From IMG/VR virus record IMGVR_UViG_3300048672_001051, positions 62,001 through 126,000 of that record: a DNA stretch of 64,000 nucleotides, one strand, 5' to 3'. Positions 7,787 to 48,953 of the stretch are shown piece by piece; position 1 is the first letter of the stretch; each line of letters begins with the position of its first letter. The position numbers and the translations under genes were made by a program. The notes beneath the pieces were generated by a model. It was not told where the DNA came from and did no database searches. It saw only the letters and a program-made list of their open reading frames with translations.

Positions 7787-10700
7787 TTAGTGGCATTGAC
7801 CCCAATTAGAACCTACGTTCCATGCCATACCAAGCTCTAAAGAGAACTCGTTATATTTAACTGCACGGTCAATACCTTTTCTAATAATGTCAGGTAAAAT
7901 ATTGTTGAGTCCAACATAATACCTACCATCTTCAAGATGTCCAATTTCACTTGTAAGCGCGTTAGCTTTTACAAATTCTTTAGCATCTTCTTCTTTATCA
8001 AATAATTTAACTGTACACATGTTCCGAGGTACTGCGTACTGGTTTTCATCCAATTACATTACGAGTGTCGCAACACACTCTCCGCCTTTTCAGGTAACTT
8101 TTATAAGTTATTTTACGGGGTTAGACCATATCACGATGTTATATAGTAACATCCCTTCCGTTTCGAATCTACATTAGCTTTAGATTCTACTCTACTCCAT
8201 TCATTTTACAATGTGTTTCGATGGCCGTTGAACTTTTTTAAAAATTATAATTACAAGATATGTGTTTCCAAGTGCTTTTTTGCTTGAGTGCTCTAACTAA
8301 AGCATAGTTGTAGCCTAAGTCTCTTATATTAGCAGATGTATGGCCCGACTCGAGTAATTTGCAAATAGCGTGAACAGTATTTTCAGTTGTAATGCAATTA
8401 GCATTATTTGAACCAACTGCTGACCTATTATTCAGATCAAAAGAGTATTTAATATTATAACCATGAGTACACCATTCAAGATTACTTAACGCATTATTTC
8501 TACGATTAGCATCTTTGTGGTTAACTTCTGGTAAATTTTCAGGGTTTGGTATAAAAGCTTCTGCTAAAAGTCTGTGAATACTCTTGCATAATCTTTTACC
8601 GCCAACTCTTAAATTAAGTATTAAATAGCCTTTGCCATTATCTTGGGGTGTCAAAAGTTTTTTATGTTTATTAAAAACTTCACCATTTACAGTTATAAAA
8701 TAACTGTCATATATTTTTTTCATTTTTAAACTTAGCTGCTGATTGCCATATTATATTTATTGTAAATCTAATTACATATTAATTAGAAATTCAATTTTAC
8801 TATAACTTAGGTTTCCAGTCAATTAAAAAGGTTATTCGATATATATCACTATATAAAGCCACAATGAATTATGGTAAGCGATCATTTGATAAATTTTATA
8901 ATCTGATTTATTGTGAACTAAAGGGTTACCCAATAAATCTAACTCTTCTAATTCTTGACAAATCAGAACAGTTGATAATTTTGCCATAGCAGCGCCAGTG
9001 CCTTGAAATAAAAGATTCAATAAACTGTGCTTACTACGCGACATTAGTTTACGGCCATCTATACCAACAATATATTGTTGACCAGAGTCCATCCACTCTT
9101 GTTCTACTTTATCTTTAAGTTCTTTTAAAGCTGGAACAGATTCCCAAAAAAGATCGTATAGACGTTGAGCTTCTTCCGCCGAAATGCTTAGCATCTTCAT
9201 CAGTTTAGTTGCCTGAGCGCCATAAAGAACAGCGTAAGTAAAACTTTTAGCTGCATCTCTAGTAATGCCAAGTTTTCTGGCATTAATGCAATTACCAGAA
9301 ACAAATATCTTATCAGAACGTTTCACTACAACAAAACTTGAAGGTACTGTAACACAACCTACAAAACCATCATAGTCAACTTCTGAATAATAATTTTTGT
9401 TAACTGTAAGGTTAGACTTATTATTTGAAATATAGCACCGATAAATAGTGCAAATGCCTTTAACAGTAGACTTAACAAATTTATTAAAGTGACCTGCACG
9501 ATTTGTTAAATGGCATAAAGTTTGAATAGTTTTAGCTGTTTTAATTGATGTTGTATCTAACACAACATCACTATTTCTAGTAACAGTACCATCCCAAAAC
9601 TGAATCTCATCTAAAACTAAATTCATTTGGCGTGAACTTAATGTTAATAAATTATCTGTAAGCGATTTATCTAAACTTAAAAAATTACGAATTTTAACTG
9701 TGTCTTCTGAAGAATTTAAATAAAAATGATAACTAGTTTCTCTATCTTTTGGGTAAGTTGTAGTATGTGTATAAGTTATCCCAAGATTATCTAAAATATC
9801 TTTAAGCCTTTGAACTTTGCGTTCTTTACTAAAAGAGAACTTTATTCCAGAACAATCTTTAAGTAAATAAGCATCTGCTTGAACAGCTACAGCTAATTTT
9901 AAAAAGTTATCAGAATACTCTGAATTATCTTCTTGCGTGAGAATACCAGTGTTAGGTATGACTCTTGCAGAAGATCTTTTAGTAAAATTATTTGCAGTAG
10001 TTACAGACCAATTCGTGCTATTAGGTAATCTTGAAACTACACGATGTTCTGGAGTGACTAACTGATCTGTTCTAGCTGATTTTATATTTATCATCTTACC
10101 TGTATGTCGCCTCCAAATAACATTAGAAGGTTTCACAAAGGAGATTACACCATCTAGCCACTGTGCAACAAGACAATCTGTAGTGACTTGGTCGAAAGTT
10201 TTCCAACCAGTACTAGTTAATATTTGAGTATCTTCTGAAAAACAATGAATTGAATTAGGTTTTTCAGCCAATAAGTCACGAGCTAAATTTACACCATCTG
10301 TATAATTTAAGCAAAAGTTAGCTTGCACTCGAGCTTCAAGAGAAGCAAAGTCAAAAGCCATTTGCATAAAGCCGTCACCAGCTTTAAACTGACTTCTAAT
10401 AGCGTAGCCTTCAATAGAGGTTACGCGAGGGACATTACAACATAAGTGTTCCCTTGTCATCGCTAGTGACAAGGCGTTTAAAAAAAACTGCTTCATATTT
10501 CTATGAAGATCGGACTATATCTTTGGCATATTTTGGTATACCATAATCTGTTTCGGGTGTCAAAAGCTTACACCCTACGTTATAAAAACTAGTCTCTGAG
10601 CATTCTTCCTATCTTGTTTCTCAACAATATTTAGAAGCTTCGTGGCTGATTGTCCATTGTAATATCTTCTTTATTTTAAAACATTCACGCTTATCTTTTA

Positions 10701-13887: not shown

Positions 13888-15508
13888 TTTCTGTTAAACT
13901 TGAATTAAATGTATCAAGCAACTTAGGTAGTAAATTTTTTTGAGTTTGATTTCTAGATAAGTATGTTAAATTTTTTAAATTAACCCAATAATATCTTAGA
14001 CTTACAAATTCACCGTCTACAATAGATCCAGTATCATTTGTAGTTTGATATACAAAATCACCGCGAGACTTGTAAATATTTTTAGATATTTTACTCAAAC
14101 CTCCGACTACACAATAATCTTTTAAAGTACTAATACGTTGAAGCTTTAACTTAAAAAGTTTAGAGGCTTGGTCGTAATATTCTCCAAAAGTAGCTACCAA
14201 GTATAGAATATTATTTTTATCATAAAGGCCGTAAGAAAAAGGATTTTTATAAAAAACATTAAAGCCTTCAAAATGATTTTCTATATGAAAATCTTTAGCT
14301 AGGTCATTAGTTATTAACCTAAGTTCTAACTTTCGGGCAAATACTCTAGTAGATAATTGTAAACAATGTTTAATTAAAGAAAAATACTTATCTTTATTAT
14401 GTAAGTATTTGAAATCATAGATACTTATTAAACGTATGCCTTGCGATTTACAAGCTAACCATTTTGAATAATGGTACTTAAAATCTTTAGAAGTTTTTAA
14501 AGCAAAAGAATTACAGTATAAGCTCCTAGAGCTGTGATGATATAAAGTACCATTATACTCAATTGCTAAATTATACTCTGGAATAAAAATATCTAACTCT
14601 TTACCTGCAAGCCATTCAGGTCTATAACTAGTTAAAATTTCAGTATTAACTAAACTTTTAATGTAATCAACTATTTCAGTTTCAGATTTAGATACGCCAA
14701 CATGTTGACATTTTAAACATCCTAAATGACCTGCTAAATGAGTTTTAGGAGTTTGCTCAAAAAAAGCACCATGTTGATTACAATACAAGGTTACTTTTAA
14801 GTTATTGTAATTACCATAATTAACTAAAGAGTAATTGTATTTATTATCGTACACAGTTTTACTTTTTAATATAAAATCTGCTGTTGTTAAATACTTAGAC
14901 TTATATAAGCAAAATCTACAGCCTGAATGTTCTATAAAATGAGTTCTAAAGTTTACAAACAAATCCCCGTGTACAGGGCAAGTAATAGTTACATCACTAG
15001 CTGTTGATTTATAAGTCTGTAAAACTTTAGAATAATCATACTTATTATTAAAAAATTCTGAAGCGGTTTTGATATGTTGGTTAATAGCAGATTCTGGTAG
15101 CTGTCTGCGCTTATTAAAACAATGCTTACAACCTACACCTTTTAAATGATCTTGTATTTTTAATTTAAAAACACCGTGAGTTTTACAAGTAACATCCACA
15201 GAAGATCTTACTTTAAGATCTTCTGTAAAAGTATAACTAAAAACATCGCCATGAAGCTCTCTAAAGCGCTGTACTAGCTCTTCAGCTGTTGTAGTGCTAG
15301 GTCTGCCTGTGCGCCTTGTCAGAGCGCACTGAGGGCATCCTGAGAGCTTAGAAAGATGATCATTAGGTGTGACATAAAAATATTCATGCAATGGGCATAA
15401 AATTTTTACTTTAGTTTTTGAATTTAAATAGACAACAGCGTCATAATTATAAAAATTATTATGTAATAAATTAGCTTTTTCAATAAAAGCAAAAGTCTTA
15501 TCAGTCAT
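13814..15508 (-). CDS. free-standing putative homing endonuclease with repeated C-x2-H...G-C-x2-C modules
   Basis: Four repeats (CPLH..GCPQC, CKTH..GCKHC, CPVH..GCRFC, CNQH..GCLKC) followed by ELDIFIPEYNLAIEYNG (PD-(D/E)xK/Vsr-like). Confidence 0.7.
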   Translation of the reverse strand: MTDKTFAFIEKANLLHNNFYNYDAVVYLNSKTKVKILCPLHEYFYVTPNDHLSKLSGCPQCALTRRTGRPSTTTAEELVQRFRELHGDVFSYTFTEDLKVRSSVDVTCKTHGVFKLKIQDHLKGVGCKHCFNKRRQLPESAINQHIKTASEFFNNKYDYSKVLQTYKSTASDVTITCPVHGDLFVNFRTHFIEHSGCRFCLYKSKYLTTADFILKSKTVYDNKYNYSLVNYGNYNNLKVTLYCNQHGAFFEQTPKTHLAGHLGCLKCQHVGVSKSETEIVDYIKSLVNTEILTSYRPEWLAGKELDIFIPEYNLAIEYNGTLYHHSSRSLYCNSFALKTSKDFKYHYSKWLACKSQGIRLISIYDFKYLHNKDKYFSLIKHCLQLSTRVFARKLELRLITNDLAKDFHIENHFEGFNVFYKNPFSYGLYDKNNILYLVATFGEYYDQASKLFKLKLQRISTLKDYCVVGGLSKISKNIYKSRGDFVYQTTNDTGSIVDGEFVSLRYYWVNLKNLTYLSRNQTQKNLLPKLLDTFNSSLTENENMENAGYLKVYDSGLTEIKFNA

Positions 15509-17255
15509 AGTCTGAAGTTACAAATAACTCTGGGTGTTCTGTCATGTAGACTTCAAAATCGTGTAACGTGTGCGTAGAATTTTCATAAAAGAAACATCCT
15601 GCATCACCAGTGATACCTGTCTGACGATTTTTAGATGCATACATGCAAGTCTTATTTTTCTCAATAGGGTCGTCTGAATACTTATTACGCGTAAATAATA
15701 GGTTGAAAGAAGCTGATTTAAAAATAGTACTACTGCCAGCGAAGTCTTCTTCCGTAATAAATGCCCCAGCACTGTTAGACTCTTTACCAGTAGGAGATTT
15801 TCTAACATGATTAATATTAATAAAAATAATACCAAAAGATTTAATCATCTCTTTCATCCATTTTAAAAATACCTCTTGAGCATCGTTCGACATACCAGCC
15901 ATCAAATCTTGTAACGGATCAATAATAATAACCTTACAGTCACATTGTATAATAAGTTGTTGGATCAACTCTTTCATACGTTCTACGTCACCATCGCGCT
16001 CTTCAATTAAGTGAAAGCGATCTTGCCCATCAGGTGTGGTGTGAAGCGTCTGTATGGCTGCTACAACATCAGGCTGCTGTAAGTAAGCTACAGCGTCATC
16101 TGGATTAACAAATAAGTTTAATTTTTTACTCAAATGTCGTGAAACAAGTGCACCACCGTACTGGCCACTATCCAATTCCATTGAGATGATACCAACTTTA
16201 TAAGGACTATTAAAAATCCAATAATAAATCATCTCATTTACAAAAGTTGTTTTACCACAGCCCGAAGCTGCACCTAAGTTCATTATACTGCCAACTTTTA
16301 AACCACCACAAAGCATCTCTTGTATCTTATGCATGAAGGGTGGAAATGGCAATTTAGGTGTTTGTATATCTTTTATAATTTCGTCATAAAGACCAGAAGA
16401 ACCTCTAATACCATTAGGATTATAAGGCTTAGCTTTAAAAAAAGCATTTATAAACTCTTTTTCTAAATTTTCTGTTAACATTTTGTTAGCGTCTTTTTTA
16501 GAAAACTCCATAACTAATACTTTACCCTTAGGTAAAACAGAAATTATATTTGGAATAGAAGCTTGGCCAGCTTTATCTTGATCAACACACAGAATGATCC
16601 GATCAAATCTATTTAGGTATTCATACTGGTGTTTAAATTGTTTATAACCACCAGAACCGACTGTAGAAGAAACACAAGGTGTTGGTGGATAATCTTTAGC
16701 TAATGGTAGCAACATCTGGTAAGCTGACAAAGCATCAAGTTCACCTTCAGTTATTAAAATAGATTTAGCTAAAGATTTTTTAAACACAGACTGCCCAAAT
16801 AGTTCAGTTGTGTCAATTTTATTACTACCTTCAGCATAAAAGTTTTTAGGCTCTGCAACTTTAACTTTCATGCCGCAAAAATCTGTTGCGCTGGATAGTG
16901 GATAAAATTGTTTTACAACTTGGCCAGTCTCTTCATTAAACTGATGATAAACGTGATACACATCGCAAGTATTTTGTGTCAAGCCTCTATAACCACGAGG
17001 GTTTGTGCTTGTTTGTTTTTTTAAATCATTCCAGTTGTCTTTCGTAAAAGAACTCAAATTATCACTCTCATATATAGGAAGTTCAATAATTTCATCTTTT
17101 AAATAGTCTGCAGAAATAACTCTATAATCACAATCTGCGGACCAACAATATTGCCCACCATTAGAATATATAGCTAAATTATTTTTAGAGGTGTCTCGGC
17201 CTTTTTCAGTACAACGAGGACAAGCCTCTTTTCTTACAACATAAGATTCAGTCAT
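15501..17255 (-). CDS. DNA primase-helicase (T7 gp4-like)
   Basis: N-terminal Zn finger CPRC...CWSADC, TOPRIM ITEGELDA and CVDQD, Walker A GAASGCGKT, IIIDPLQD, HVRK. Confidence 0.92.
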   Translation of the reverse strand: MTESYVVRKEACPRCTEKGRDTSKNNLAIYSNGGQYCWSADCDYRVISADYLKDEIIELPIYESDNLSSFTKDNWNDLKKQTSTNPRGYRGLTQNTCDVYHVYHQFNEETGQVVKQFYPLSSATDFCGMKVKVAEPKNFYAEGSNKIDTTELFGQSVFKKSLAKSILITEGELDALSAYQMLLPLAKDYPPTPCVSSTVGSGGYKQFKHQYEYLNRFDRIILCVDQDKAGQASIPNIISVLPKGKVLVMEFSKKDANKMLTENLEKEFINAFFKAKPYNPNGIRGSSGLYDEIIKDIQTPKLPFPPFMHKIQEMLCGGLKVGSIMNLGAASGCGKTTFVNEMIYYWIFNSPYKVGIISMELDSGQYGGALVSRHLSKKLNLFVNPDDAVAYLQQPDVVAAIQTLHTTPDGQDRFHLIEERDGDVERMKELIQQLIIQCDCKVIIIDPLQDLMAGMSNDAQEVFLKWMKEMIKSFGIIFININHVRKSPTGKESNSAGAFITEEDFAGSSTIFKSASFNLLFTRNKYSDDPIEKNKTCMYASKNRQTGITGDAGCFFYENSTHTLHDFEVYMTEHPELFVTSDYD

Positions 17256-40294: not shown

Positions 40295-42688
40295 TTAAAC
40301 ACATGAAGTATAATTAGCAACACTATTAAGAACTTGATAATGTTGCAATGCTTTTGTTGTAGTACCGGTAGAGCCGTAACGAGCAACATACGCTTGAGCT
40401 GCTGAAACATCTTCACCAGCTAAATGAGTGCGAATGATCTCTTGAACAGTCCGGTAATCATCAAGTGTACGAGAGGCTGACATATTTGAACCACTAATAA
40501 AAGTAACTTTTTTATGTGTGACAATTTCAGTCAAAACACATTGAAATAAGTTAGCTAGTAGTGACGCAGCAATATCATTGCCACTGAACATTTGCTCAGG
40601 ATTATCGTCAGTACCTCGAGCGTCTACCTCAGCACAGGATTCTATTTGAACTTCTTCAAAGTCGCTAAAAATATCTGCATGATCAATTGTATAATAATCA
40701 CGACCTAAACGGTTGTAATAAACTTGACCATTAAATAAATTAACGCCAGCAGAAAAATAGTAATTATTCCAGTTAAATGCTTCAGAATTAGCTGAGATAT
40801 ACAAATCTAATGCTTTTTTAAAACCTTCATTATCGACTAAATTCATAACATGACTTGTATTATCAATACCAATATCTTTGATATCAATAAATAAATCAAG
40901 ATCGCGATTTAGGTCAGCAGGATTTTCATAAGCAAATTCATCGTAGTCTGAATAGTAGCCAAACTTCGGCAAGTACGAAACAGTGATATTTTGATATAAA
41001 CCGTTGTAACGGTTTGACAAAACTTCAGCTTTGTTTAAGCCAATATCTGCTGAAATAAAGTTCTGCCGAAGCAAATTCTTTTGTTCCCATTTGTTACAAT
41101 TTGAAACTTAGATATTTATTATATTTTCTATCTAAAAAAATAGAAGAATCTTTGTACAATAAATCTAAGAATGTATTTACATTTTGCTTACCAGAAAGCG
41201 TTAAAGCATAACAGCAATTTTCAGTATTAAATCTTTTATATAATTTAGTATTAAATTTAATTGAACAATCAGCCTCAATTAAACTTTTAACTTCATTTAA
41301 AAAAGATTTAGTTCCAGCAATAGATGCACAGTAGCGCGTATAGCCATCCTTACATAAAGATTTAGACATACTGCCATCACCATCAAAGTAACCCCTAATA
41401 AAATGAATAAAAAATTCTTTTGGGATATTTGGAAACTTAAAATCTGTTGTTTTATTTCTGGTAAAACCAAGACTGCGTAATTTGCTAATCATGTGTAAGT
41501 TTGAAAAAGACAGCGAACAAACATTTGTTATTTTGCCAGTAAAGGTACATAACTGTGTAAATGTTTTAATTTTAACGTCACTTTTTAAACAAATTTTAAT
41601 TTTTTCTAAGATTTCAATATCTTTTGAGTTTAATGCAATTTTAAGCTCATAGTCACCGACGTAACCGTCAGCAGCAATAAATCCTAAAATGTAAGCTTTT
41701 TCCTCAGTATTTATGATATCAAAAAAATTATAATCTGCTTTAATAGTATTAAGCCAATCAACTGGCCTTTTAAAATTGTGTCTCTTAGCTAGTGCGTTTA
41801 CATTGACTAGGCTGCAGTTATATTTTATAGCTAACTCTGAAGTTGTCAGACCTTTATCATAATCTTTTAATAAATTTATTACGTCATTTTTAACATGAAA
41901 TAAACCTGCTTTGAATAAACGCCTTTCAGCAGTTTTTTCAGAACAATTTAAAATACGCATAACGTCATTTTTATCAATAAGATTTTTAAAAGAAAGACTT
42001 TTTAAAAGAGTTAACTCTTTAATAATAACATCTTGTTTAATTGGTAAGTACATTATTTTGACTCCTATAATTGTACAATGTGGCGAGACCACTATTGAGA
42101 AAAACAATCATATCAGACAAAATTTCAAACGTCAACCTCCTTTCTGTTCGGGGTTGAACTTTGGCTTGATATTATCTTTAAATAATACCTAGTGTATAAT
42201 ATGCCAAAGAGCAGACTATCGCATAAACTAATGTAATCCCTACATTAGTTTCTCTTTCGCTTAGTCGTTCACGGTGCCTTGAGTTTTAATAGATTTTTAA
42301 ATCTATCTCATGCTTCCGCCTTGTTGTCCTTATACTAGGAGTTCCAAGTCAATTAGAAAGAGTTTTATATCGTCCAACATTAAACGATATCGCCATCAAC
42401 AAGAATAATTTCAACTTTAAAGTTGTGACTACGTTTATGCAAAAGATCATTATAGATCTTTAACAGTTTTGGAAGAATCCAACTTGTAGTACCACCAGCG
42501 CCAAAAATAAATAACTTCTGATCTAAGTACTCCCGTGGAAGCTCTTTTGCATTTTTTAACAGACGAAGAAAAGCAAATTTATCTAACGCATCAATAGCTG
42601 AAATTTTTTCAGGTTGTACTGGACGATATTTAAGTGCACGAATCCACTGCGCCAGTGTGATTTGTTTTAAAATAGGTTCTACTTTCAT
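40295..42688 (-). CDS. ThiF/E1-like adenylyltransferase, two exons (42688-42383, 41086-40295), 365 aa
   Basis: FIFGAGGTTS nucleotide-binding loop; spliced VDGDIV|EQKNLLRQNF; NKAEVL; SCAE...EQ...NDIAA as in PRTRC-type ThiF. Confidence 0.9.
41087..42382 (-). mobile_element. group I intron (1296 nt) in ThiF gene
   Basis: P1 ATATCGTT/GACGATAT ending in U.G; P TTGACTTGGAAC, Q ACAAGGCGGAAG, R GTGAACGACTA, S GCGATAGTCT; terminal G before GAACAA; reading frame restored. Confidence 0.9.
41094..42053 (-). CDS. intron-encoded double-motif LAGLIDADG homing endonuclease
   Basis: YILGFIAADGY and FIRGYFDGDGS; likely start MYLPIKQ with AGGAG upstream. Confidence 0.88.
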   Translation of the reverse strand: MYLPIKQDVIIKELTLLKSLSFKNLIDKNDVMRILNCSEKTAERRLFKAGLFHVKNDVINLLKDYDKGLTTSELAIKYNCSLVNVNALAKRHNFKRPVDWLNTIKADYNFFDIINTEEKAYILGFIAADGYVGDYELKIALNSKDIEILEKIKICLKSDVKIKTFTQLCTFTGKITNVCSLSFSNLHMISKLRSLGFTRNKTTDFKFPNIPKEFFIHFIRGYFDGDGSMSKSLCKDGYTRYCASIAGTKSFLNEVKSLIEADCSIKFNTKLYKRFNTENCCYALTLSGKQNVNTFLDLLYKDSSIFLDRKYNKYLSFKL

Positions 42689-42731: not shown

Positions 42732-45700
42732 TCAGTGTTGCGTGACTAAAGCGTTGTGATAGCTGTCTATCAAGAATTTCGCCTCTTCGGCAGGATCCAT
42801 ACTGTCATACGGTACGTCATCATCAACTACAATAATGCTAGAATTTTCTGCATCAGGCGCAGAAAAAATGTCTTGCTCAGAACCGACAGCCAGAAGACCT
42901 TGATTGAAAAAGTGACTTAATTCATTCAATTGATCTTCTGTAAAAGCTGTTTGATAGCCAACAATATCTAACAAAGTTGTAAACAAGTCTACAATTTCGT
43001 CCATGTTTAGTGGTACAGAAGTTTTAGCGTAATAAGGCGTAGGCAACAAACGTCCCAACAACTTCTCAAACTCTTGCAGTAACCGGTGCTGTTGAGTATC
43101 AATAGCCCAAAGAGTTAAATAGACACTTAACGGCTGATATCTTGGATAAACCGGTGGAACATATGGTTTACCTTTACCAGCAGGTGGTGTATAACCAAGA
43201 GCACCAACTGACTTATTGTACGAAGCAATTTCAACAATTTTATCTTCAGAGCCAGCAGGTACACTGTAATCAGAATCTTCTTGAAGTTTTTCAATATCGC
43301 GATCAAAAATATCGTTAACTTTCAAAACAACTTGTTGTTGATTTGAAGCAGCACGAACAACAATTTCAGGGACTTCATTACTAAGCTTACCAATAACGCC
43401 AAACAAACGAGAAGCCTTCTCGTCGTTTAAATCACCACCACTGAAGAATGCCATAATATTCAATACAGATCGTTAATCTGTACCCGCACCTATTAAAGAT
43501 GCTGCTTATACTTTCATATAAGAGTAGACTATATCTTCTTTCAGTTTAAACTGAAAGCTCTCCATTTCCACCCACTTGGGTGTACGATACTCGATTCATT
43601 CAAAAAGAATGTCTTTCTCTAGTCGTTGAACTTTTACCGTAGAATAAATTCTTTAGGTACTTAGCTGCTGATTATCCAATTCTATTAATTTTCAAACATT
43701 CACACTTATCTTTTCAGATTATGTTGTAGTTTAATAGACTCTTATGAATTAATAATACAATCTAATACATATTTTTCTGTAATTAATTTTTTATAAATAA
43801 TTCTAACTAATTTAATATTATTATCTAAACAATATTGATTTTTAATCTCATCACATTCTTTTGAATATTCTGAGTACCATATATGATTTTCATCATAATG
43901 TTGTAACCCATCCGCTTCAATCATAAGATTTTTAGAGGGGATATAAAAATCAATCCTTAAAGGGTATCCTTTAGGAGATAATAATTTTTCATTAGTATAT
44001 TCACAAATAATATTATTATAATTAGCACTTAATGCATTATAAATATTATTTTCAAAGTTAGAATTACTTTTAAAAAATCCTAGCATATTATTTAAATTAC
44101 ACATTGAAATTTTTAATTTAGTTAAAGTTTTATTAGATCTTTTAATAGTGTTAATAATTTCACTATTAGTACAATATCTATTCTTACTTAAAATAAATTC
44201 TAAAATTTCTTTTTCTACTACCTCTTTAGTTAATTCTTCAGAGGATCTTCGAGCTTTTGCTGCACAAGATTTTGAGCAAAATATGGTATTAAGTGTATAC
44301 TTAGTGCCATACTGCATATTAGTGTATAAATTTAAATATTCTTTATTACAGAATTTACATATTTTTTTATTACTTTTCATATCCTATTTCCAATTATATT
44401 TTAATTTCTGCTATTAAAAAGCATTAATATAATTATAATTGAAAGACTTATCAAAGTCGAGGAAAGGAACTTCCAGCAATTAGAAGAGTTTTACATGAGC
44501 ACATTTAAGCTTTACTCATATCTACATGCGACATTGTAGATGTGTTATGAATTGTTTTTTAATATACAATTCCTTGACAAGAATTTCTTTGTAATATAAA
44601 CTTTACGTCATTACACCATGACTATATAAGTCAAAATTTTACGACATAAAGCAGGTACATTAAAATTTGTTAAAACTAGAAAAATACAAAGACTATATTA
44701 TAACAAATATAGCGCAAAACAAACCAATTAGCATAATAGCTAAAGAGTTAAATGAATACCCTCAAGCAGTTAGAAACGTAATAAAAAAATACTTACCTGA
44801 TAAAAAATTTATACATGATCAGGGAAATATTTCTTATTTTAATAAAATAGACTGTGATGCTAAAGCATACTTTATAGGCTTCATTGCTGCAGATGGATCA
44901 CTAGTAAAACGTAAAAGTGATAATAGCATAGCATTAAGTATAACTATCAATAAAAAAGATAAATTAATACTAGATACTTTAAAAAATTGTATAGGTTGTG
45001 AAAATCCTGTAAGTTTTTTAAAATTAAATGATTTAGTAAGGTTTGTTATACAAAACAAACAAATATCAGATGATCTACAAACTTACGGAATTGAGCCTAA
45101 CAAATCTTTAACTATGCCGTCAATTATTCATAAAATACCGAAAGAATACAGAAAAGCATTCTTAAGAGGTTATTTTGATGGCGATGGTAGTGTATTCAAA
45201 AGTTCTAAAAACAAATATTATGTAACTATAAGAGGCACGTTAGAATTTTTACAAGCATACATAGAAGAGTTTAATTTAAGTTCGTATTCGTTAAAAAAAT
45301 ACGATTACGAAAAAATTGGGAAATTAACAACAGGGTCTAAAGACTCTATTAAAAAATTTATAACTATGTATGAAAATTCTGAAATACACTTACAAAGAAA
45401 ACATGAAATATTTTTAAATTTCATGGAAAAACATTGTCAAGATCAGACTATCTCATCACCCTAGTTTAACTAGGGTGTGCGGCACTCGTGTCGGTCTTAT
45501 TGGACTAGATCCTCAACCGTTAGTCGTTACACCCAACTGACTACTTTTACTCTATTCGTCAGTCTTGGCACGGTATTGTCCTTTTTCTAGGAGTTTCACC
45601 GTTAGCATTAACTATATTAGTTAACACACCCTTTTCAGGTTCACCGCATTATTCAATTAGCATTACTGCTAAAGGCCACTCGCTTTTAATGGATATCCAT

Positions 45701-46111
45701 AACGATGAAAAAGTTTGAATTGTTAAGCATCGCAGGATCATTTTGAAAATTAACTGTAGCCCCACCAACACGTTGTTCAGGCACATACAGAAAATAGTCT
45801 TGCTTTGCAATATCCCAATAAATTGAGATATACACTTCTGATCGCATCTTATTTTTAATAACGCGGAAAAATTCAACGATATTAGTAAGAAGTGCGACGG
45901 GAATTTTCGGAAGTGCAGAAACGTAGCTAACTTCACAAGTTTGATTAAGACCTAAACGCTTTAGGTCAATCTTATCAATTTGAATAGTAAAAGTGCCTAC
46001 AGGCTCTTTACGACGTTGCCAAATACCATTAGCAAAAGCAGCGTTTGAGAACTTTTTAGTTTCATCAAAACATTCTACTGTAAAGCCATTTAAATCAGGA
46101 AACATACTCAT
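42732..46111 (-). CDS. JAB/MPN metalloprotease (PRTRC protein A-like), three exons (46111-45689, 44531-44514, 43451-42732), 386 aa
   Basis: Spliced sequence reads ...SEV...VPEQ...MDIH|SHVDMS|AFFSGGDLNDE, the canonical E...HSH...S..D JAB motif. Confidence 0.9.
43452..44513 (-). mobile_element. group I intron B of JAB gene (1062 nt)
   Basis: P1 ATGAGT/GCTCAT; P10 AATGT/GCATT; P ATTGCTGGAAG, Q AATCAGCAGC, R GTTCAACGACTAG, S AAGATATAGTCT; ends ...ATTATG. Confidence 0.92.
43742..44380 (-). CDS. intron-encoded Vsr/EDxHD-like homing endonuclease
   Basis: CKFC...FCSKSC zinc motif; RIDFYIPSKNLMIEADGLQHY...DEIKNQYC. Confidence 0.8.
   Translation of the reverse strand: MKSNKKICKFCNKEYLNLYTNMQYGTKYTLNTIFCSKSCAAKARRSSEELTKEVVEKEILEFILSKNRYCTNSEIINTIKRSNKTLTKLKISMCNLNNMLGFFKSNSNFENNIYNALSANYNNIICEYTNEKLLSPKGYPLRIDFYIPSKNLMIEADGLQHYDENHIWYSEYSKECDEIKNQYCLDNNIKLVRIIYKKLITEKYVLDCIINS
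44574..44602 (+). promoter_or_regulatory. sigma70-like promoter for the antisense endonuclease
   Basis: TTGACA (44574-79), 17 nt, TAAACT (44597-602), 65 nt upstream of the plus-strand ORF. Confidence 0.65.
44667..45464 (+). CDS. LAGLIDADG homing endonuclease, antisense within intron A
   Basis: YFIGFIAADGSL and FLRGYFDGDGSV; homologous to the 41094-42053 enzyme. Confidence 0.88.
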   Translation: MLKLEKYKDYIITNIAQNKPISIIAKELNEYPQAVRNVIKKYLPDKKFIHDQGNISYFNKIDCDAKAYFIGFIAADGSLVKRKSDNSIALSITINKKDKLILDTLKNCIGCENPVSFLKLNDLVRFVIQNKQISDDLQTYGIEPNKSLTMPSIIHKIPKEYRKAFLRGYFDGDGSVFKSSKNKYYVTIRGTLEFLQAYIEEFNLSSYSLKKYDYEKIGKLTTGSKDSIKKFITMYENSEIHLQRKHEIFLNFMEKHCQDQTISSP

Positions 46112-46959
46112 TGGAAAAATCTACCTACACGGGTTAGTTCATTACGAGTTATATTACGTAAAAAATTTTGGGATGGGCTTGGCAATACATTGTATTGATA
46201 ATACATGTAAATATAAGACATTTCATTTAATCGCAAATGAGCTTCATTTGTAAAAAAGTCTGGTCTGAAAACAGTTTGAAGAAAATCTTTAAATCCAGGC
46301 GTAGAATTTACTAGATCTCTACCTACAGCCACGTTAGGATCTAAATCTGTATTAAACAAACTGCTTAAGTACAAACGTACAAAACCTGCTTGGTCTGCTG
46401 GTGAAGTAGAATTCAAAACAGCTTGTGCTGTGTCTGCAATGTCATGAGGCCAACAAATTTTATCACTGTAGTGATTATTAAATACACTTTTATGATATTT
46501 TGTTTCGTCTGTAACATTTAAACTCAAGCCTGTCATTTCAGCAAAACAGACATTATAACTAATAAAATTTCGAGAAGCATTATTGTTTGAAATAATAAAA
46601 CCTAAAATATTTTTAAATTTAAATGCTGGAAAGTTTAATGCATGACGATTACCAACACTGTGCACTTTAAAGTGATCGTTTGGTATTAGATACTGACTAA
46701 TCGTATCAACTGAGTTACCAGCAAAATTCAAAGCTACAGTCAATTCTGGATAGTGAAACAAACGTTTAATTCGTGATTCTAAAATGACTTCACGAATTAA
46801 GTTTGTACCAATATATCCAGAGTCTTTACGAGAAACTTTCTGTGCACCAAAAAAGTCAACAATATCTGTATAAGGAATTTGTTTTGTAATTTGACGGCCT
46901 TGCTCTTCAGTGGTAACTGCAACATGAGTAGCTTGTGGAATATATTTAAAAGTAATCAT
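46108..46959 (-). CDS. prokaryotic E2-like protein (Prok-E2 family D / PRTRC protein B-like)
   Basis: YHKSVFNNHYSDKICWP and YLSSLFNTDL patterns; lies between Ubl and JAB. Confidence 0.65.
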   Translation of the reverse strand: MITFKYIPQATHVAVTTEEQGRQITKQIPYTDIVDFFGAQKVSRKDSGYIGTNLIREVILESRIKRLFHYPELTVALNFAGNSVDTISQYLIPNDHFKVHSVGNRHALNFPAFKFKNILGFIISNNNASRNFISYNVCFAEMTGLSLNVTDETKYHKSVFNNHYSDKICWPHDIADTAQAVLNSTSPADQAGFVRLYLSSLFNTDLDPNVAVGRDLVNSTPGFKDFLQTVFRPDFFTNEAHLRLNEMSYIYMYYQYNVLPSPSQNFLRNITRNELTRVGRFFQ

Positions 46960-47318
46960 AAGTATTGTGAACTCTGAAGTGGGGCGCTAAGCGAAGCTTT
47001 AAAAAATGTCTTAAATTCTAAAAAGTAACTTAAAGGAATAACGACACGATCAGTTTCTGCATCTAATGCCTGCAGAAACTGCGTAAGATTTTGATTACTA
47101 GGTTGAAATGCAGAAAAATGCGAATAAGCCGCAGCTTTATCTGCCCGACATCTGCGAAAAAAATCAACTAAATTTTGAAAATTAGTATCAACAACGCCAG
47201 CAGAATTTACAAAATTTTGTAAATTATCATAAAAAATATTGAGCGGTGTAGGTTCGTTATTAGATTGTAATTGGTCTTGGATATTCATAGACGTAATATT
47301 TCTCAGAGTTAGGTACAA
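46956..47318 (-). CDS. hypothetical protein within the Ubl module
   Basis: ORF; likely start MNIQDQL. Confidence 0.5.
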   Translation of the reverse strand: MYLTLRNITSMNIQDQLQSNNEPTPLNIFYDNLQNFVNSAGVVDTNFQNLVDFFRRCRADKAAAYSHFSAFQPSNQNLTQFLQALDAETDRVVIPLSYFLEFKTFFKASLSAPLQSSQYL

Positions 47319-47859
47319 CAGTCAAGGGGACTATAGTCAACCGCGGACCATCTGTAACGTTGCCAGTATTTGCTACTTTAAAATAGCTACCAGCAGAATC
47401 TTTTATGGCAATTCTTTGGCTCATAAATACAGCTAAGAAGTCTTCAGTCTTTGTATGAATAGCAAATTCAAGATAAAGGCTAGGACATAACTGATCGGGA
47501 GTTACGTTAAAAGTGCTACACAAACCATTTTCAAAAGATTTGTAACGTTCTAAAGGGTACAAAAGCAATTGATTTAATAAAGTTGCTTCTAGAGTTTCAT
47601 TTAAGCTAAATACGAAGTTTTTAAAACTAGTACCTAATTGTAAATAATACTCAGGTTTTACTAAAGGTTCTACAGTTGATTTATTATGAATTATAGATAA
47701 ATATTTTTCATAATTAATATGTTCAACTACAGTTTTAACCCACTCTACAAATTTCTGTTTTTTTATATTATCTAAATTTTGACAATATCTATAAAGAATA
47801 TAACCTTTTAATTCGTACATAATAATTTCTTTGGCAGTATAAAAAGGTTGAGGTTGCAC
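47260..47859 (-). CDS. hypothetical protein within the Ubl module
   Basis: ORF; likely start MYELKG at about 47819. Confidence 0.5.
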   Translation of the reverse strand: MQPQPFYTAKEIIMYELKGYILYRYCQNLDNIKKQKFVEWVKTVVEHINYEKYLSIIHNKSTVEPLVKPEYYLQLGTSFKNFVFSLNETLEATLLNQLLLYPLERYKSFENGLCSTFNVTPDQLCPSLYLEFAIHTKTEDFLAVFMSQRIAIKDSAGSYFKVANTGNVTDGPRLTIVPLTVVPNSEKYYVYEYPRPITI

Positions 47860-47871
47860 TCGTGCAACCTC
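47850..47871. terminator. hairpin downstream of the Ubl gene
   Basis: GAGGTTGCAC-TC-GTGCAACCTC perfect 10-bp stem. Confidence 0.55.
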
Positions 47872-47895
47872 ACTAGCTAAGCTTTCGCCAGCTTA

Positions 47896-48108
47896 TTACG
47901 CAGCGTTTTTAGTGCCGGTAGGGATGGTAAATGTTAGAACATTTACACCGTTAACAACGTTAACAACAGGTGTAGCATTACGCAATTCTGCGTAAGTGCC
48001 CGACAATTCAGTCTTAATTTGTTCTGGGGTGTAACCAGTAACAGTAGAGTTGATGCCGCCAGCTGGGTATTGAACTTGGTAAACAGTTTGAGTGAACATA
48101 GTAGTCAT
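47896..48108 (-). CDS. ubiquitin-like protein (PRTRC protein C-like)
   Basis: 70 aa; TPEQIKTELSGTYAELRNA and C-terminal LTFTIPTGTK match the Prok_Ub pattern; ends GTKNAA. Confidence 0.75.
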   Translation of the reverse strand: MTTMFTQTVYQVQYPAGGINSTVTGYTPEQIKTELSGTYAELRNATPVVNVVNGVNVLTFTIPTGTKNAA

Positions 48109-48201
48109 ATAGATAAATCCTAAATAAAATAGCCTAATTGAAAGATAAATTTGAAATTATTGGCTATTTATAATTTCAAAAATTTTACATTTATATGCTT
48201 A

Positions 48202-48447
48202 TTAACGAATCTGAGACGCGATAGTAAGCAGTGAGTTTACAGCAGTTTGCAAAGTTTCAGCAAGTTGAGTCAATTGAACAGCAGCTGGGTTATTAACACC
48301 AGGCGATTGCAGTTGACTTAAAATGTTAGAAGTTTGCGGGGGAGTTGGCGCTTGAACACCAGCCATGAGTTGAGGACCAAGAGCTGGGATAGGCTCTGGA
48401 ATAACTCCGGGTTGGTTGCCTTGGCGCAACTGGGTCATAATATCCAT
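48202..48447 (-). CDS. Pro/Gln-rich low-complexity protein
   Basis: 81 aa; disordered-looking N-terminus and helical C-terminus. Confidence 0.6.
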   Translation of the reverse strand: MDIMTQLRQGNQPGVIPEPIPALGPQLMAGVQAPTPPQTSNILSQLQSPGVNNPAAVQLTQLAETLQTAVNSLLTIASQIR

Positions 48448-48452
48448 AGATT

Positions 48453-48872
48453 TTAAAGTATCAGTTGGTTACGAGCATCTGAGACTGGGCTACAAATATA
48501 CGAGTCGTTTTGGCTCATAAGTGTTGCACGGTCTTCAGGACAATTTGCATTATGGTCGTTAATAAAATCTTGAATAACAGCAGTATTCAAAGCTTTATGA
48601 CCAATAACACGAGTTACGCGTGAGATAACTTTTAAGCGACCAACTTCAGAATAAGGTATAAATCCATGAAATTTATAACTATTCTTGTTAATGCTTAAAT
48701 CATTATTTACACAGTTAAGACGTAGTAAATAAATACCATGCTTAACGTTATCTTTGGCTGCAACAACGTAGTCGTGACCACGAGGATGATGCCAAATACG
48801 TACAACTGTTCCAAGTGTCAAACGACTACTAGGAATTTCAGATTGGACGATAGTAGAAACTGCAGATGTCAA
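48453..48872 (-). CDS. hypothetical protein
   Basis: 139-aa ORF. Confidence 0.55.
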   Translation of the reverse strand: MTSAVSTIVQSEIPSSRLTLGTVVRIWHHPRGHDYVVAAKDNVKHGIYLLRLNCVNNDLSINKNSYKFHGFIPYSEVGRLKVISRVTRVIGHKALNTAVIQDFINDHNANCPEDRATLMSQNDSYICSPVSDARNQLIL

Positions 48873-48953
48873 TCTCTTCCACCTTTTTTTTAGAATTAAA
48901 AAATAAGTATAATTTAAAAACTATACACCAAAGATGCTTAAAAATCTAAAGCA

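What the first reader, a model, noticed from the sequence alone, without database searches (positions are those of the whole stretch)
47896..48108. Ubl ends in GTKNAA instead of a terminal glycine
Ubiquitin-like modifiers are normally activated at a C-terminal Gly, and PRTRC protein C typically ends GTKG. Here the last residues are GTKNAA followed by TAA TAA. Possible readings: JAB trims the tail after the Gly of TG or after Asn, the E1 adenylates a non-Gly terminus, or the Ubl is non-conjugating. MccB provides a precedent for an E1-like enzyme acting on a C-terminal Asn.
Basis: partly seen in the sequence, partly recalled or inferred. Interest (0 to 1): 0.62.

Follow-up and report, generated by a model that had tools for sequence, protein, structure and literature searches.

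The report
Phage ubiquitin-like protein ending in asparagine
A 230-kb freshwater phage carries a ubiquitin-like conjugation cassette whose small modifier protein has a conserved asparagine where this whole protein family, and every studied ubiquitin-like modifier I know of, has the terminal glycine, so its activating enzyme probably has to work on a non-glycine end.

Summary
ORF 47896..48108 (-) encodes 70 aa ending ...TGTKNAA, followed by TAA TAA.

The protein is a distant Prok_Ub / PRTRC-protein-C homologue in a jumbo phage. Downstream lie an E2-like gene, a JAB gene and a ThiF-type E1 gene. The JAB and E1 genes are interrupted by homing-endonuclease insertions.

Asn68 is not an error. It aligns with the terminal Gly of the family's G-x-K-G end (114 G, 8 N, 4 A among 126 units). 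All 33 members of the phage subclade found have G-x-K-N. What follows the Asn varies: nothing (9), G (15), A (3), V (3), AA (window only), TSV (1), VG (1). Short variable caps after the terminal residue are the norm across the family, including plasmid PRTRC-C.

The AA tail is therefore an ordinary cap, and the conserved Asn is the unusual feature. Most likely the cap is trimmed and the E1 adenylates the Asn alpha-carboxylate.

The Asn-type E1s keep the ATP motifs and a conserved Cys, and carry a clade-specific GVN motif where the other E1s examined have GN. Processing after Gly65 and a sequencing error are both disfavoured. MccB-like side-chain chemistry is not excluded. No biochemical test exists. 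I rate this a new variant of a known, uncharacterised kind.

The parts
47896..48108 (-). Ubl gene, 70 aa, beta-grasp, Prok_Ub/PRTRC-C superfamily. Ends G65-T-K67-N68-A-A. The first stop is included here; a second TAA lies at 47893-47895.
   Evidence: Relatives. AF2 model beta-beta-alpha-beta-beta with pLDDT 76. ESM Atlas features 0.90 to PRTRC-C clusters and TM 0.78 to a viral Prok_Ub-containing cluster. VIA-align list dominated by Ubl domains, Z up to 5.3.
47905..47907 (-). Asn68 codon AAC, at the alignment position of the family's terminal Gly.
   Evidence: Alignment A1. HMM tally of 114 G / 8 N / 4 A. 33/33 clade members have Asn. Codon AAC in 8 loci and AAT in one.
47899..47904 (-). Two-residue cap Ala69-Ala70, predicted to be removed.
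   Evidence: Caps after Asn vary within the clade (none, G, A, V, AA, TSV, VG). Caps are the rule in the wider family and in plasmid PRTRC-C.
47839..47872 (-). Intrinsic-terminator-like hairpin (10-bp stem, 4-nt loop) plus T-run directly after the Ubl stop codons.
   Evidence: z = -3.0. A hairpin plus T-run follows the Ubl gene in all eight related loci.
48118..48121 (-). AGGA ribosome-binding site 9 nt upstream of the first ATG.
   Evidence: Read directly.
46108..46959 (-). 283-aa E2-like protein with invariant Cys169 (I-C-W-P) and an F-N-x-D-L motif. It sits at the place of PRTRC protein B / Prok-E2_D.
   Evidence: Alignments A3 and A5. hhalign against Prok-E2_D-annotated proteins of G-type cassettes gives 89% probability, E 2.2e-6. 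No direct Pfam hit. The AF2 model is unusable.
45689..46111 (-). JAB (PRTRC-A-like) 5' exon, ending ..IVMDIH at the first His of the JAMM H-x-H motif.
   Evidence: tblastn with the intact 349-aa orthologue of L006. That orthologue hits TIGR03735 at 2.8e-10 and Prok-JAB at 0.0014.
42732..43472 (-). JAB 3' coding part (..NIMAFFSGGD.. onwards). The exact 3' splice site is unresolved.
43505..45698 (-). Insertion in the JAB gene. It holds two group I intron cores (45423-45698 and 43505-43729), an antisense LAGLIDADG ORF (44667-45464, + strand) and an HNH ORF (43742-44380).
   Evidence: Rfam RF00028 at 48.8 and 43.3 bits. Pfam and PHROG hits.
42383..42688 (-). E1 (ThiF-type) 5' part: G-A-G-G-T-T-S nucleotide loop through ..LVDGDIV.
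40295..41086 (-). E1 3' part, starting E-Q-K-N-L-L-R-Q-N-F. It contains the D-I-G-x-N-K-A, V-D-N and A-G-V-N..G-Q motifs and the conserved Cys (E-S-C-A-E).
   Evidence: TIGR03736 at 6.5e-5. ThiF at 16.7 bits. tblastn. Alignment.
41094..42107 (-). LAGLIDADG-type endonuclease frame inside the E1 interruption. Boundaries are T|..G|, as for a group I intron, but no Rfam hit was found.
46956..47859 (-). Two small ORFs between the Ubl and E2-like genes, at the place of the fast-evolving PRTRC-F-like genes. Function unknown.
   Evidence: Syntenic small genes in L004, L006 and L009. No family hits.

Best explanation
The gene encodes the modifier of a phage-borne, highly diverged PRTRC-type ubiquitin-like conjugation cassette: Ubl, two small proteins, an E2-like protein with a conserved Cys, a JAB peptidase and a ThiF-type E1. 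In this phage clade the terminal Gly of the family's G-x-K-G end has been replaced by an invariant Asn.

The window's protein is a precursor with a disposable two-residue cap (Ala-Ala). The cap is removed, most likely by the cassette's JAB peptidase, to expose Lys67-Asn68-COOH. The E1 then adenylates the alpha-carboxylate of Asn68. The Ubl is passed through the conserved E1 and E2-like cysteines onto unknown phage or host targets.

The Asn end is matched by a clade-specific E1 variant (A-G-V-N..G-Q in place of G-N-x..G-Q). A plausible benefit is insulation of the phage's modifier from Gly-specific E1s and peptidases of the host or of other mobile elements.

Shown here: gene, homology, invariance of Asn, variability of the cap, cassette composition, and retained catalytic motifs in intact relatives. 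Inferred: the cleavage site, the enzyme that cleaves, adenylation of Asn, the thioester relay, and the insulation rationale.
For: Identity as a Ubl:
- The exhaustive HMMER search links the ORF to mono- and poly-Ubl proteins whose units end G-T-K-G.
- Several of these carry Pfam Prok_Ub.
- One of them (P0058) matches annotated PRTRC system protein C in 229 plasmids.
- The Atlas search and the AF2 model give a beta-grasp with a flexible tail.

Asn at the Gly position:
- Alignment A1 puts N68 under the terminal G.
- The NCBIfam PRTRC_C profile ends one position after the aligned K67.
- HMM tally: 114 G, 8 N, 4 A.

Asn is selected:
- 33 of 33 clade members (clusters at 90% identity, many samples) have G-x-K-N. 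Their caps differ and nine have no cap.
- In a tree built without the end residues, cap states are interspersed.
- Both Asn codons occur.

Caps are normal: most family members, including plasmid PRTRC-C, carry 1-20 variable residues after the terminal residue.

Competent cassette:
- The intron-free orthologous cassette (L006) has a JAB with H-S-H-x7-S-x2-D and a ThiF E1 above the Pfam cut-off.
- E1 ATP motifs and a conserved Cys are present in the window's exons.
- The E2-like protein has an invariant Cys.

E1 co-variation:
- G-V-N in 4/4 Asn-type E1s, against G-N in 14 G-type phage E1s, the A-type E1 and pHG1.
- In the nested Ala-ending lineage the syntenic E1 has lost its ATP motifs, and a G-N-E-type ThiF sits elsewhere in the genome.
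Against: - There is no biochemical evidence for any step.
- In the one bacterial E1 relative tested for this, Cap2, the terminal Gly tolerates only Ala; Ser, Val, Arg and Trp abolish conjugation (PMC10097602). An Asn end would need a changed pocket.
- An Asn acyl-adenylate or thioester is prone to cyclise to a succinimide, as in MccB (PMC12250964). This would compete with a plain relay.
- 15 of 33 clade members end K-N-G, so a terminal Gly after an inserted Asn cannot be excluded for that subset.
- In the window and in L009 the JAB gene is interrupted exactly at the H-x-H motif. The codon for the second His is not found next to the 3' exon (the read-through gives H-S-V and H-K-N). The window's own JAB may therefore be impaired, or may need a splice I could not define.
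- The E1-Ubl complex prediction gave no verdict.
- Direct HMM support for the family is sub-threshold.
- E1 co-variation rests on a single clade.
Confidence: 0.55

Rival explanations
1. MccB-like or succinimide chemistry. The Asn side chain takes part. After adenylation, or spontaneously at Asn-Gly / Asn-Ala, the side-chain amide attacks the activated carbonyl and gives a C-terminal succinimide. That succinimide would either be the species that reacts with targets, become nucleotidylated, or be the means by which the cap removes itself.
For: - MccB, an E1-like enzyme, acts specifically on a C-terminal Asn through an acyl-adenylate and a succinimide (PMC12250964).
- Asn is invariant in 33/33 clade members.
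- The commonest cap is Gly, and Asn-Gly is the most cyclisation-prone dipeptide (established chemistry; my knowledge).
- The window's and L009's JAB genes are interrupted at the metal-binding motif although their Ubls carry caps.
Against: - The E1 keeps a conserved Cys, and an E2-like protein with an invariant Cys is retained. MccB forms no thioester (PMC12250964).
- No match to an MccB-type N-terminal peptide-clamp domain: the family scans of the intact E1 hit only ThiF-type models.
- Nine clade members have no cap to remove.
- A lineage nested inside the Asn clade has switched to Ala and forms tandem units, so the side chain is not indispensable to the fold or family.
Confidence: 0.13
2. The Ubl is not conjugated. 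Loss of the terminal Gly made it a non-activatable binding module or decoy, for example an inhibitor of Gly-specific host E1s or JAB enzymes, and the neighbouring enzymes are decaying.
For: - In the window both the JAB and the E1 genes are interrupted.
- The second JAMM His is not recoverable by simple read-through.
- Some beta-grasp families lack a conserved C-terminal residue (PMC1779556).
- The A-type relative has a pseudo-E1 at the syntenic place.
Against: - Intact, motif-complete JAB, E1 and E2-like genes accompany Asn-ending Ubls in L004 and L006.
- The flexible tail G-x-K-N is the best conserved part of the protein, which fits a tail that enters an active site.
- The E1 interruption has group-I-like boundaries and restores a colinear motif.
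Confidence: 0.1
3. Processing occurs upstream, after Gly65. A Gly is then the activated end, and T-K-N-A-A is all cap.
For: Gly65 is nearly invariant, and a Gly end would fit every known E1.
Against: - Lys67 is invariant across the 22 sequences and units of alignment A1 and Asn68 is invariant in the clade. True caps in this family are hypervariable.
- Uncapped family members end at the position of Asn68 (..GTKG..GDKG..GQKN), never at the position of Gly65.
Confidence: 0.04
4. Sequencing or assembly error at the Asn codon, or a chance ORF.
For: The window comes from a metagenome assembly, and public contigs did not cover the codon for re-checking.
Against: - Two base changes would be needed.
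- Asn is present in 33 related proteins from many independent runs.
- Homology is strong and synteny is conserved.
Confidence: 0.01

Closest known systems
PRTRC system (ParB-related, ThiF-related cassette): protein C (TIGR03738 / Pfam Prok_Ub PF14454) with proteins F, B, A and a ThiF protein. This is operon type 6d of Iyer, Burroughs and Aravind 2006 (PMC1779556).
   Same: - Small beta-grasp Ubl with a G-x-K-X end.
- Gene order Ubl, small or variable genes, E2-like, JAB with an N-terminal extra domain, ThiF E1 (pHG1 order E-C-F-B-A-ThiF).
- Short variable caps after the terminal residue.
- Best NCBIfam hits of the intact relatives' JAB and E1 are PRTRC_A and PRTRC_ThiF.
   Different: - The terminal residue is Asn, not the 'highly conserved glycine' that the describing paper lists for this Ubl.
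- All HMM scores lie far below the curated cut-offs.
- No ParB gene in the phage.
- Carried by a jumbo phage rather than a plasmid or ICE.
- E1 is about 90 aa longer and has G-V-N in place of G-N-E.
- The enzyme genes are interrupted by introns and homing endonuclease genes.
Phage and plasmid poly-Ubl cassettes with Prok-E2_D, Prok-JAB and ThiF (for example loci L013 and L014, and IMG/VR loci).
   Same: They are the closest sequence relatives outside the Asn clade, with the same cassette logic. Tandem units imply peptidase cleavage after the residue at the position of Asn68.
   Different: Their units end in Gly, and they are often 2-7 tandem copies. The window's Ubl is a single unit ending in Asn.
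MccB / MccA (microcin C biosynthesis).
   Same: An E1-like adenylating enzyme that acts on a C-terminal Asn (PMC12250964).
   Different: - The substrate is a heptapeptide, not a beta-grasp protein.
- MccB has an N-terminal peptide clamp, forms no thioester and has no E2 or JAB partners.
- The product is a peptidyl-nucleotide.
- No match to MccB-type models in the family scans: the E1 hits only ThiF-type families.
Type II CBASS Cap2/Cap3 with the cGAS C-terminus; Bil and Bub bacterial ubiquitination-like systems.
   Same: Bacterial E1/E2/JAB-type conjugation of a protein C-terminus. Peptidase processing exposes the end (PMC10097602, PMC11601596).
   Different: Those systems use a terminal Gly (Cap2 also Ala). 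In Cap2, Ser, Val, Arg or Trp at the end abolish conjugation (PMC10097602). The E1 here gives only a weak hit to a cap2-type model (E 0.00068-0.013).

Membership tests
PRTRC system protein C (TIGR03738) / Pfam Prok_Ub (PF14454) | Score at or above the curated HMM cut-off. | tested here: not met
   TIGR03738 gives 13.6 bits, E 0.054, against a cut-off of 45.95. PF14454 gives no hit for the ORF or in a six-frame search of the genome. The L006 orthologue scores 13 bits.
PRTRC system protein C / Prok_Ub | Homology traceable through intermediate sequences. | tested here: met
   phmmer links the ORF to G-T-K-G units at E down to 3.6e-22. Several of these carry PF14454. P0058 matches annotated PRTRC protein C in 229 plasmids. 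The Atlas feature score is 0.90 to PRTRC-C clusters.
PRTRC system protein C / Prok_Ub | [quoted passage not shown] | tested here: not met
   Asn68 occupies that column. All 33 clade members have Asn.
PRTRC system protein C / Prok_Ub | Beta-grasp fold with a flexible C-terminal tail. | tested here: met
   AF2 gives beta-beta-alpha-beta-beta at pLDDT 76, with the tail at 62-70 of low confidence. Atlas TM is 0.78 to a viral Prok_Ub-containing cluster. VIA-align top rows are Ubl domains at a modest Z of 4-5.3. Foldseek against PDB gave nothing significant.
PRTRC cassette | Neighbouring JAB (protein A), E2-like (protein B) and ThiF genes in the order C-F-B-A-ThiF. | tested here: met
   The window order is Ubl, two small ORFs, E2-like, JAB, E1. 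The intact orthologues hit PRTRC_A at 2.8e-10 and PRTRC_ThiF at 4.1e-11, both below cut-off. E2 homology rests only on hhalign at 89%.
PRTRC cassette | Associated ParB-family gene. | tested here: not met
   No ParB_N match in the 229.7-kb phage record.
E1-activated ubiquitin-like modifiers in general | C-terminal carboxylate adenylated by the cognate E1 and transferred to targets. | not testable with these tools
   Only motif retention could be checked. The complex prediction returned no verdict.
MccB-type peptide adenylyltransferase system | E1-like enzyme with an N-terminal RRE/peptide-clamp domain, a short peptide substrate ending in Asn, and no thioester relay. | tested here: not met
   The substrate is a 70-aa beta-grasp protein. 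The E1 hits only ThiF-type models and keeps a conserved Cys, and an E2-like partner is present. Features of MccB are taken from PMC12250964.

The most novel reading that the evidence does not exclude
The invariant C-terminal Asn is there for its side chain. Activation by the E1, or spontaneous cyclisation at Asn-Gly / Asn-Ala, would yield a C-terminal succinimide on a ubiquitin-like protein. That would give a new mode of Ubl activation or cap removal (self-cleaving precursor, succinimide-mediated ligation, or protein nucleotidylation). It would mechanistically bridge microcin-C-type E1 chemistry and ubiquitin-type protein conjugation.
Probability: 0.13. Interest if true: 0.85.

Novelty: new variant of a known kind. 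Interest (0 to 1): 0.6.

Why it matters
As far as I know, every E1-activated protein modifier studied so far ends in Gly, or Ala in some CBASS cGAS proteins. In the Cap2 experiments other residues at the end abolish conjugation (PMC10097602).

A whole clade of phage Ubls with an invariant terminal Asn, each paired with an E1 carrying its own motif variant, would be a natural experiment on how E1 enzymes read the modifier's last residue. It also suggests a natural orthogonal Ubl/E1 pair, which could serve as a tool.

It bears too on what the uncharacterised PRTRC-type cassettes do in jumbo phages. The intron-free relatives found here (for example locus L006) give directly expressible Ubl, JAB, E2-like and E1 genes for testing.

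Tried and rejected
- **Family scans.** Pfam, NCBIfam and PHROGs scans of the ORF and its neighbours at E <= 0.01 gave nothing for the Ubl. Only sub-threshold PRTRC hints appeared at relaxed E.
- **Phage collection.** megablast and tblastn against the phage collection found no match.
- **Single-sequence searches.** The word-based protein search with the single ORF found only itself. IMG/VR scans with the single Ubl or the single E2-like protein found nothing.
- **Fold search.** Foldseek against PDB gave no significant hit.
- **Complex prediction.** Complex prediction of the L006 E1 with ATP and its Asn-ending Ubl returned no verdict (score 0.27, mark 0.34). I do not use it as evidence either way.
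- **E2-like model.** AF2 of the E2-like protein reached only pLDDT 46 and is unusable.
- **Read-level check.** Read laying on 43000-48900 with four runs returned contigs only. They did not cover the Asn codon, showed no credible splice joints, and placed a single 186-nt metatranscriptome contig at 47059-47244. It is uninformative on resequencing, expression and splicing.
- **JAB splice junctions.** I tried to define them by eye and from the Rfam alignments. No 3' site preceded by G restores H-x-H-x7-S-x2-D. A 6-nt mini-exon (43722-43727) ahead of the second intron core would restore it, but only with a non-G intron end. This stays unresolved.
- **Sequencing error.** Rejected for the reasons given under the rival explanations.
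- **Asn as a conserved first cap residue after loss of Gly.** Some G-type caps begin with N. This fits less well, because caps are otherwise hypervariable and nine proteins end at Asn.
- **Literature.** Searches found no description of an Asn-ending Ubl or of this phage clade.

Full report
**1. What is there**

The window is bases 62001-126000 of a 229,656-bp IMG/VR virus record. It is about 31% G+C, is estimated to be 98% complete, and comes from freshwater metagenomes.

On the minus strand, 47896..48108 encodes 70 aa ending I-P-T-G-T-K-N-A-A, followed by TAA TAA. An AGGA lies 9 nt before the first ATG. A 10-bp hairpin with a T-run follows the stops. The Asn codon is AAC, so a Gly codon would need two changes.

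**2. What the protein is**

Curated HMMs barely see it. Pfam Prok_Ub gives no hit. NCBIfam PRTRC_C gives E = 0.054 and 13.6 bits against a cut-off of 45.95. In that alignment Lys67 falls on profile position 65 of 66, so Asn68 falls on the last profile position.

The exhaustive HMMER search over 1.84 billion representatives found 24 relatives, in two groups:
- Group (i): single-domain proteins of 57-72 aa, the closest relatives, which all have Asn at the same place.
- Group (ii): proteins made of 2-7 head-to-tail units, each ending G-[TS]-K-G, with short linkers and a short tail after the last unit.

A profile search added more group (ii) proteins, many carrying a precomputed Prok_Ub hit. One of them matches genes annotated 'PRTRC system protein C' in 229 plasmids.

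Canonical plasmid proteins end ..GAKG+AHARI..GAKG+SDA..GTKG+72 aa..GDKG and ..GRKG.

The ESM Atlas search gives feature scores of 0.90 to PRTRC-C clusters and TM 0.78 to a viral cluster that partly carries Prok_Ub. ThiS/MoaD and ubiquitin appear further down the list.

An AF2 model built on the alignment is beta-beta-alpha-beta-beta with a low-confidence tail from residue 62 (pLDDT 76). VIA-align ranks ubiquitin-like domains at the top with modest Z values up to 5.3. Foldseek found nothing significant.

I conclude that this is a diverged member of the Prok_Ub / PRTRC-C superfamily. It does not meet the curated family thresholds.

**3. The cassette**

Downstream on the same strand lie:
- two small ORFs;
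- a 283-aa protein;
- a JAB gene whose 5' exon ends at the first His of H-x-H;
- an insertion with two group I intron cores (48.8 and 43.3 bits), an antisense LAGLIDADG gene and an HNH gene;
- the rest of the JAB gene;
- a ThiF-type E1 split between ..DGDIV and EQKNLLRQNF.. by a LAGLIDADG-type frame.

Related contigs carry the same cassette. L006 (a 227-kb contig) has it without interruptions:
- Ubl of 65 aa, then genes of 91 and 78 aa;
- a 263-aa gene;
- a 349-aa gene (PRTRC_A 2.8e-10, with the full JAMM motif);
- a 361-aa gene (PRTRC_ThiF 4.1e-11; ThiF 41 bits, above the cut-off).

The 283-aa protein has an invariant Cys in an I-C-W-P motif. It aligns to Prok-E2_D-annotated proteins of G-type cassettes by hhalign (89% probability, E 2.2e-6). 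This matches the plasmid order E-C-F-B-A-ThiF.

The phage has no ParB gene and only this one Ubl gene.

**4. The C-terminus**

An HMM built from the family alignment places the last match state on G in 114 units, N in 8 and A in 4. Lys at -1 is invariant and Gly at -3 nearly so in alignment A1.

A profile search seeded with the Asn group returned 33 such proteins (clusters at 90% identity). Every one has G-x-K-N. After the Asn come:
- nothing: 9;
- G: 15;
- A: 3;
- V: 3;
- AA: 1 (the window);
- TSV: 1;
- VG: 1.

A tree made from the sequences with the end residues removed joins the Asn and Ala types in one clade, apart from the Gly types (support 96/93). Cap states are interspersed in it. The window groups with P0086 (..TGTKNA). 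The Ala-ending tandem proteins nest inside the Asn clade (100/95). The alignment is short, so most forks are unresolved.

In the wider family, short variable tails after the terminal residue are the rule, and the tandem forms require cleavage at that position.

So the Ala-Ala tail is ordinary and the invariant Asn is the anomaly. Reading Asn as a sequencing error is untenable. Processing after Gly65 would make an invariant Lys and an invariant Asn part of a throw-away cap, which does not fit how caps behave in this family.

**5. How it most likely works**

The tail is the most conserved segment of a flexible region, as expected for a tail that enters an E1 and a peptidase active site.

The Asn-type E1s keep the nucleotide loop, the N-x-x-R-Q-x-F and D-[IV]-x-x-N-K-A motifs, V-D-N and a conserved Cys.

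They also share A-G-V-N-L-[FY]-N-G-Q (4 of 4). By contrast, 14 G-type phage E1s, the Ala-type E1 and the pHG1 PRTRC ThiF have G-N-x...G-Q.

In the Ala-type phage (L015), the protein at the syntenic E1 place has lost its ATP-binding residues. An intact G-N-E-type ThiF lies elsewhere in that genome. This is what one would expect if the end residue and the E1 type must match. It is one clade and one event, so it is a lead and not proof.

My best reading (about 0.55 as a whole) is this: the cap is removed, the E1 adenylates the Asn alpha-carboxylate, and the usual Cys relay follows.

The main chemical objection is that activated Asn tends to cyclise, as MccB exploits (PMC12250964). This keeps a side-chain-dependent mechanism alive (about 0.13). 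The retained E1 and E2-like cysteines, the uncapped members and the nested switch to Ala argue against it being essential.

**6. Open problem in the window itself**

In the window and in L009 the JAB gene is cut right after the first His codon of H-x-H. Reading the downstream exon colinearly gives H-S-V (window) and H-K-N (L009) where intact relatives have H-S-H.

I could not find a splice that restores the second His with a canonical intron end. A CAACAT hexamer ahead of the second intron core is a candidate mini-exon.

Whether this phage's own JAB is active is therefore unknown. The two relatives with an intact JAB of known context have uncapped Ubls. The two with an interrupted JAB have capped ones. 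With n = 4, no conclusion can be drawn.

**7. Comparison and novelty**

The studied bacterial systems use Gly, and Cap2 also accepts Ala. Ser, Val, Arg and Trp abolish conjugation in Cap2 (PMC10097602). Bub uses Gly (PMC11601596).

I found no paper describing an Asn-ending Ubl clade.

This is a new variant of a known but experimentally uncharacterised kind. It is interesting chiefly as a natural re-tuning of E1 / end-residue specificity, and it is directly testable with the intron-free relatives.

Noticed in passing
window 43472-46111 (-); L009 10789-13909: The JAB gene is interrupted right after the first His codon of the JAMM H-x-H motif in two phages. In the window the insertion holds two complete group I intron cores, an antisense LAGLIDADG gene and an HNH gene. 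Colinear read-through lacks the second His (H-S-V in the window, H-K-N in L009). A 6-nt CAACAT ahead of the second intron core (43722-43727) might be a mini-exon.
   Followed up: partly
window 40295-42688 (-); L004 13062-15429; L009 14749-16184: The E1 gene is broken at the same point (..DGDxV | ExKNLxRQNF) in three phages. The window and L004 have a LAGLIDADG-type gene in the gap. L009 has a cluster of tRNA genes there (15234-15759). The window's boundaries are T| and G|, as for a group I intron, but Rfam finds no intron, and the 3' part has no start codon upstream of the conserved motif.
   Followed up: partly
window 47839-47872 (-); L003-L011 just after the Ubl genes: Every Asn-type Ubl gene examined is followed immediately by a hairpin and a T-run. 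This suggests a transcript end or attenuation point that would give more Ubl than enzymes.
   Followed up: partly
L015 10323-11366 and 2131-2913: In the Ala-ending di-Ubl phage, the protein at the syntenic E1 place is a ThiF-like protein that has lost the glycine loop, the Arg-Gln and the Lys. An intact 260-aa ThiF sits 5 kb upstream, next to a radical SAM gene.
   Followed up: partly
IMG/VR loci L022-L075: 16 of 54 viral ThiF loci have a Prok_Ub-type Ubl within 9 kb. Fifteen end in Gly, several with four tandem units, so PRTRC-like poly-Ubl cassettes are common in large phages.
   Followed up: partly
window 8832-10496 (-): The family A DNA polymerase ORF carries a LAGLIDADG domain inside it (intein- or intron-like). 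Together with the other endonuclease genes, this makes the region unusually rich in homing elements.
   Followed up: no
window 48202-48447 (-): An 81-aa Pro/Gln-rich ORF lies directly upstream of the Ubl, at the place of PRTRC protein E. Similar-sized genes precede the Ubl in L004 and L011. No family hit.
   Followed up: no
L006 12626-13711: The intact Asn-type E1 gives a weak Pfam hit to Tad6, the Type I Thoeris inhibitor (E 0.005, residues 134-243). It is probably a shared-fold signal.
   Followed up: no
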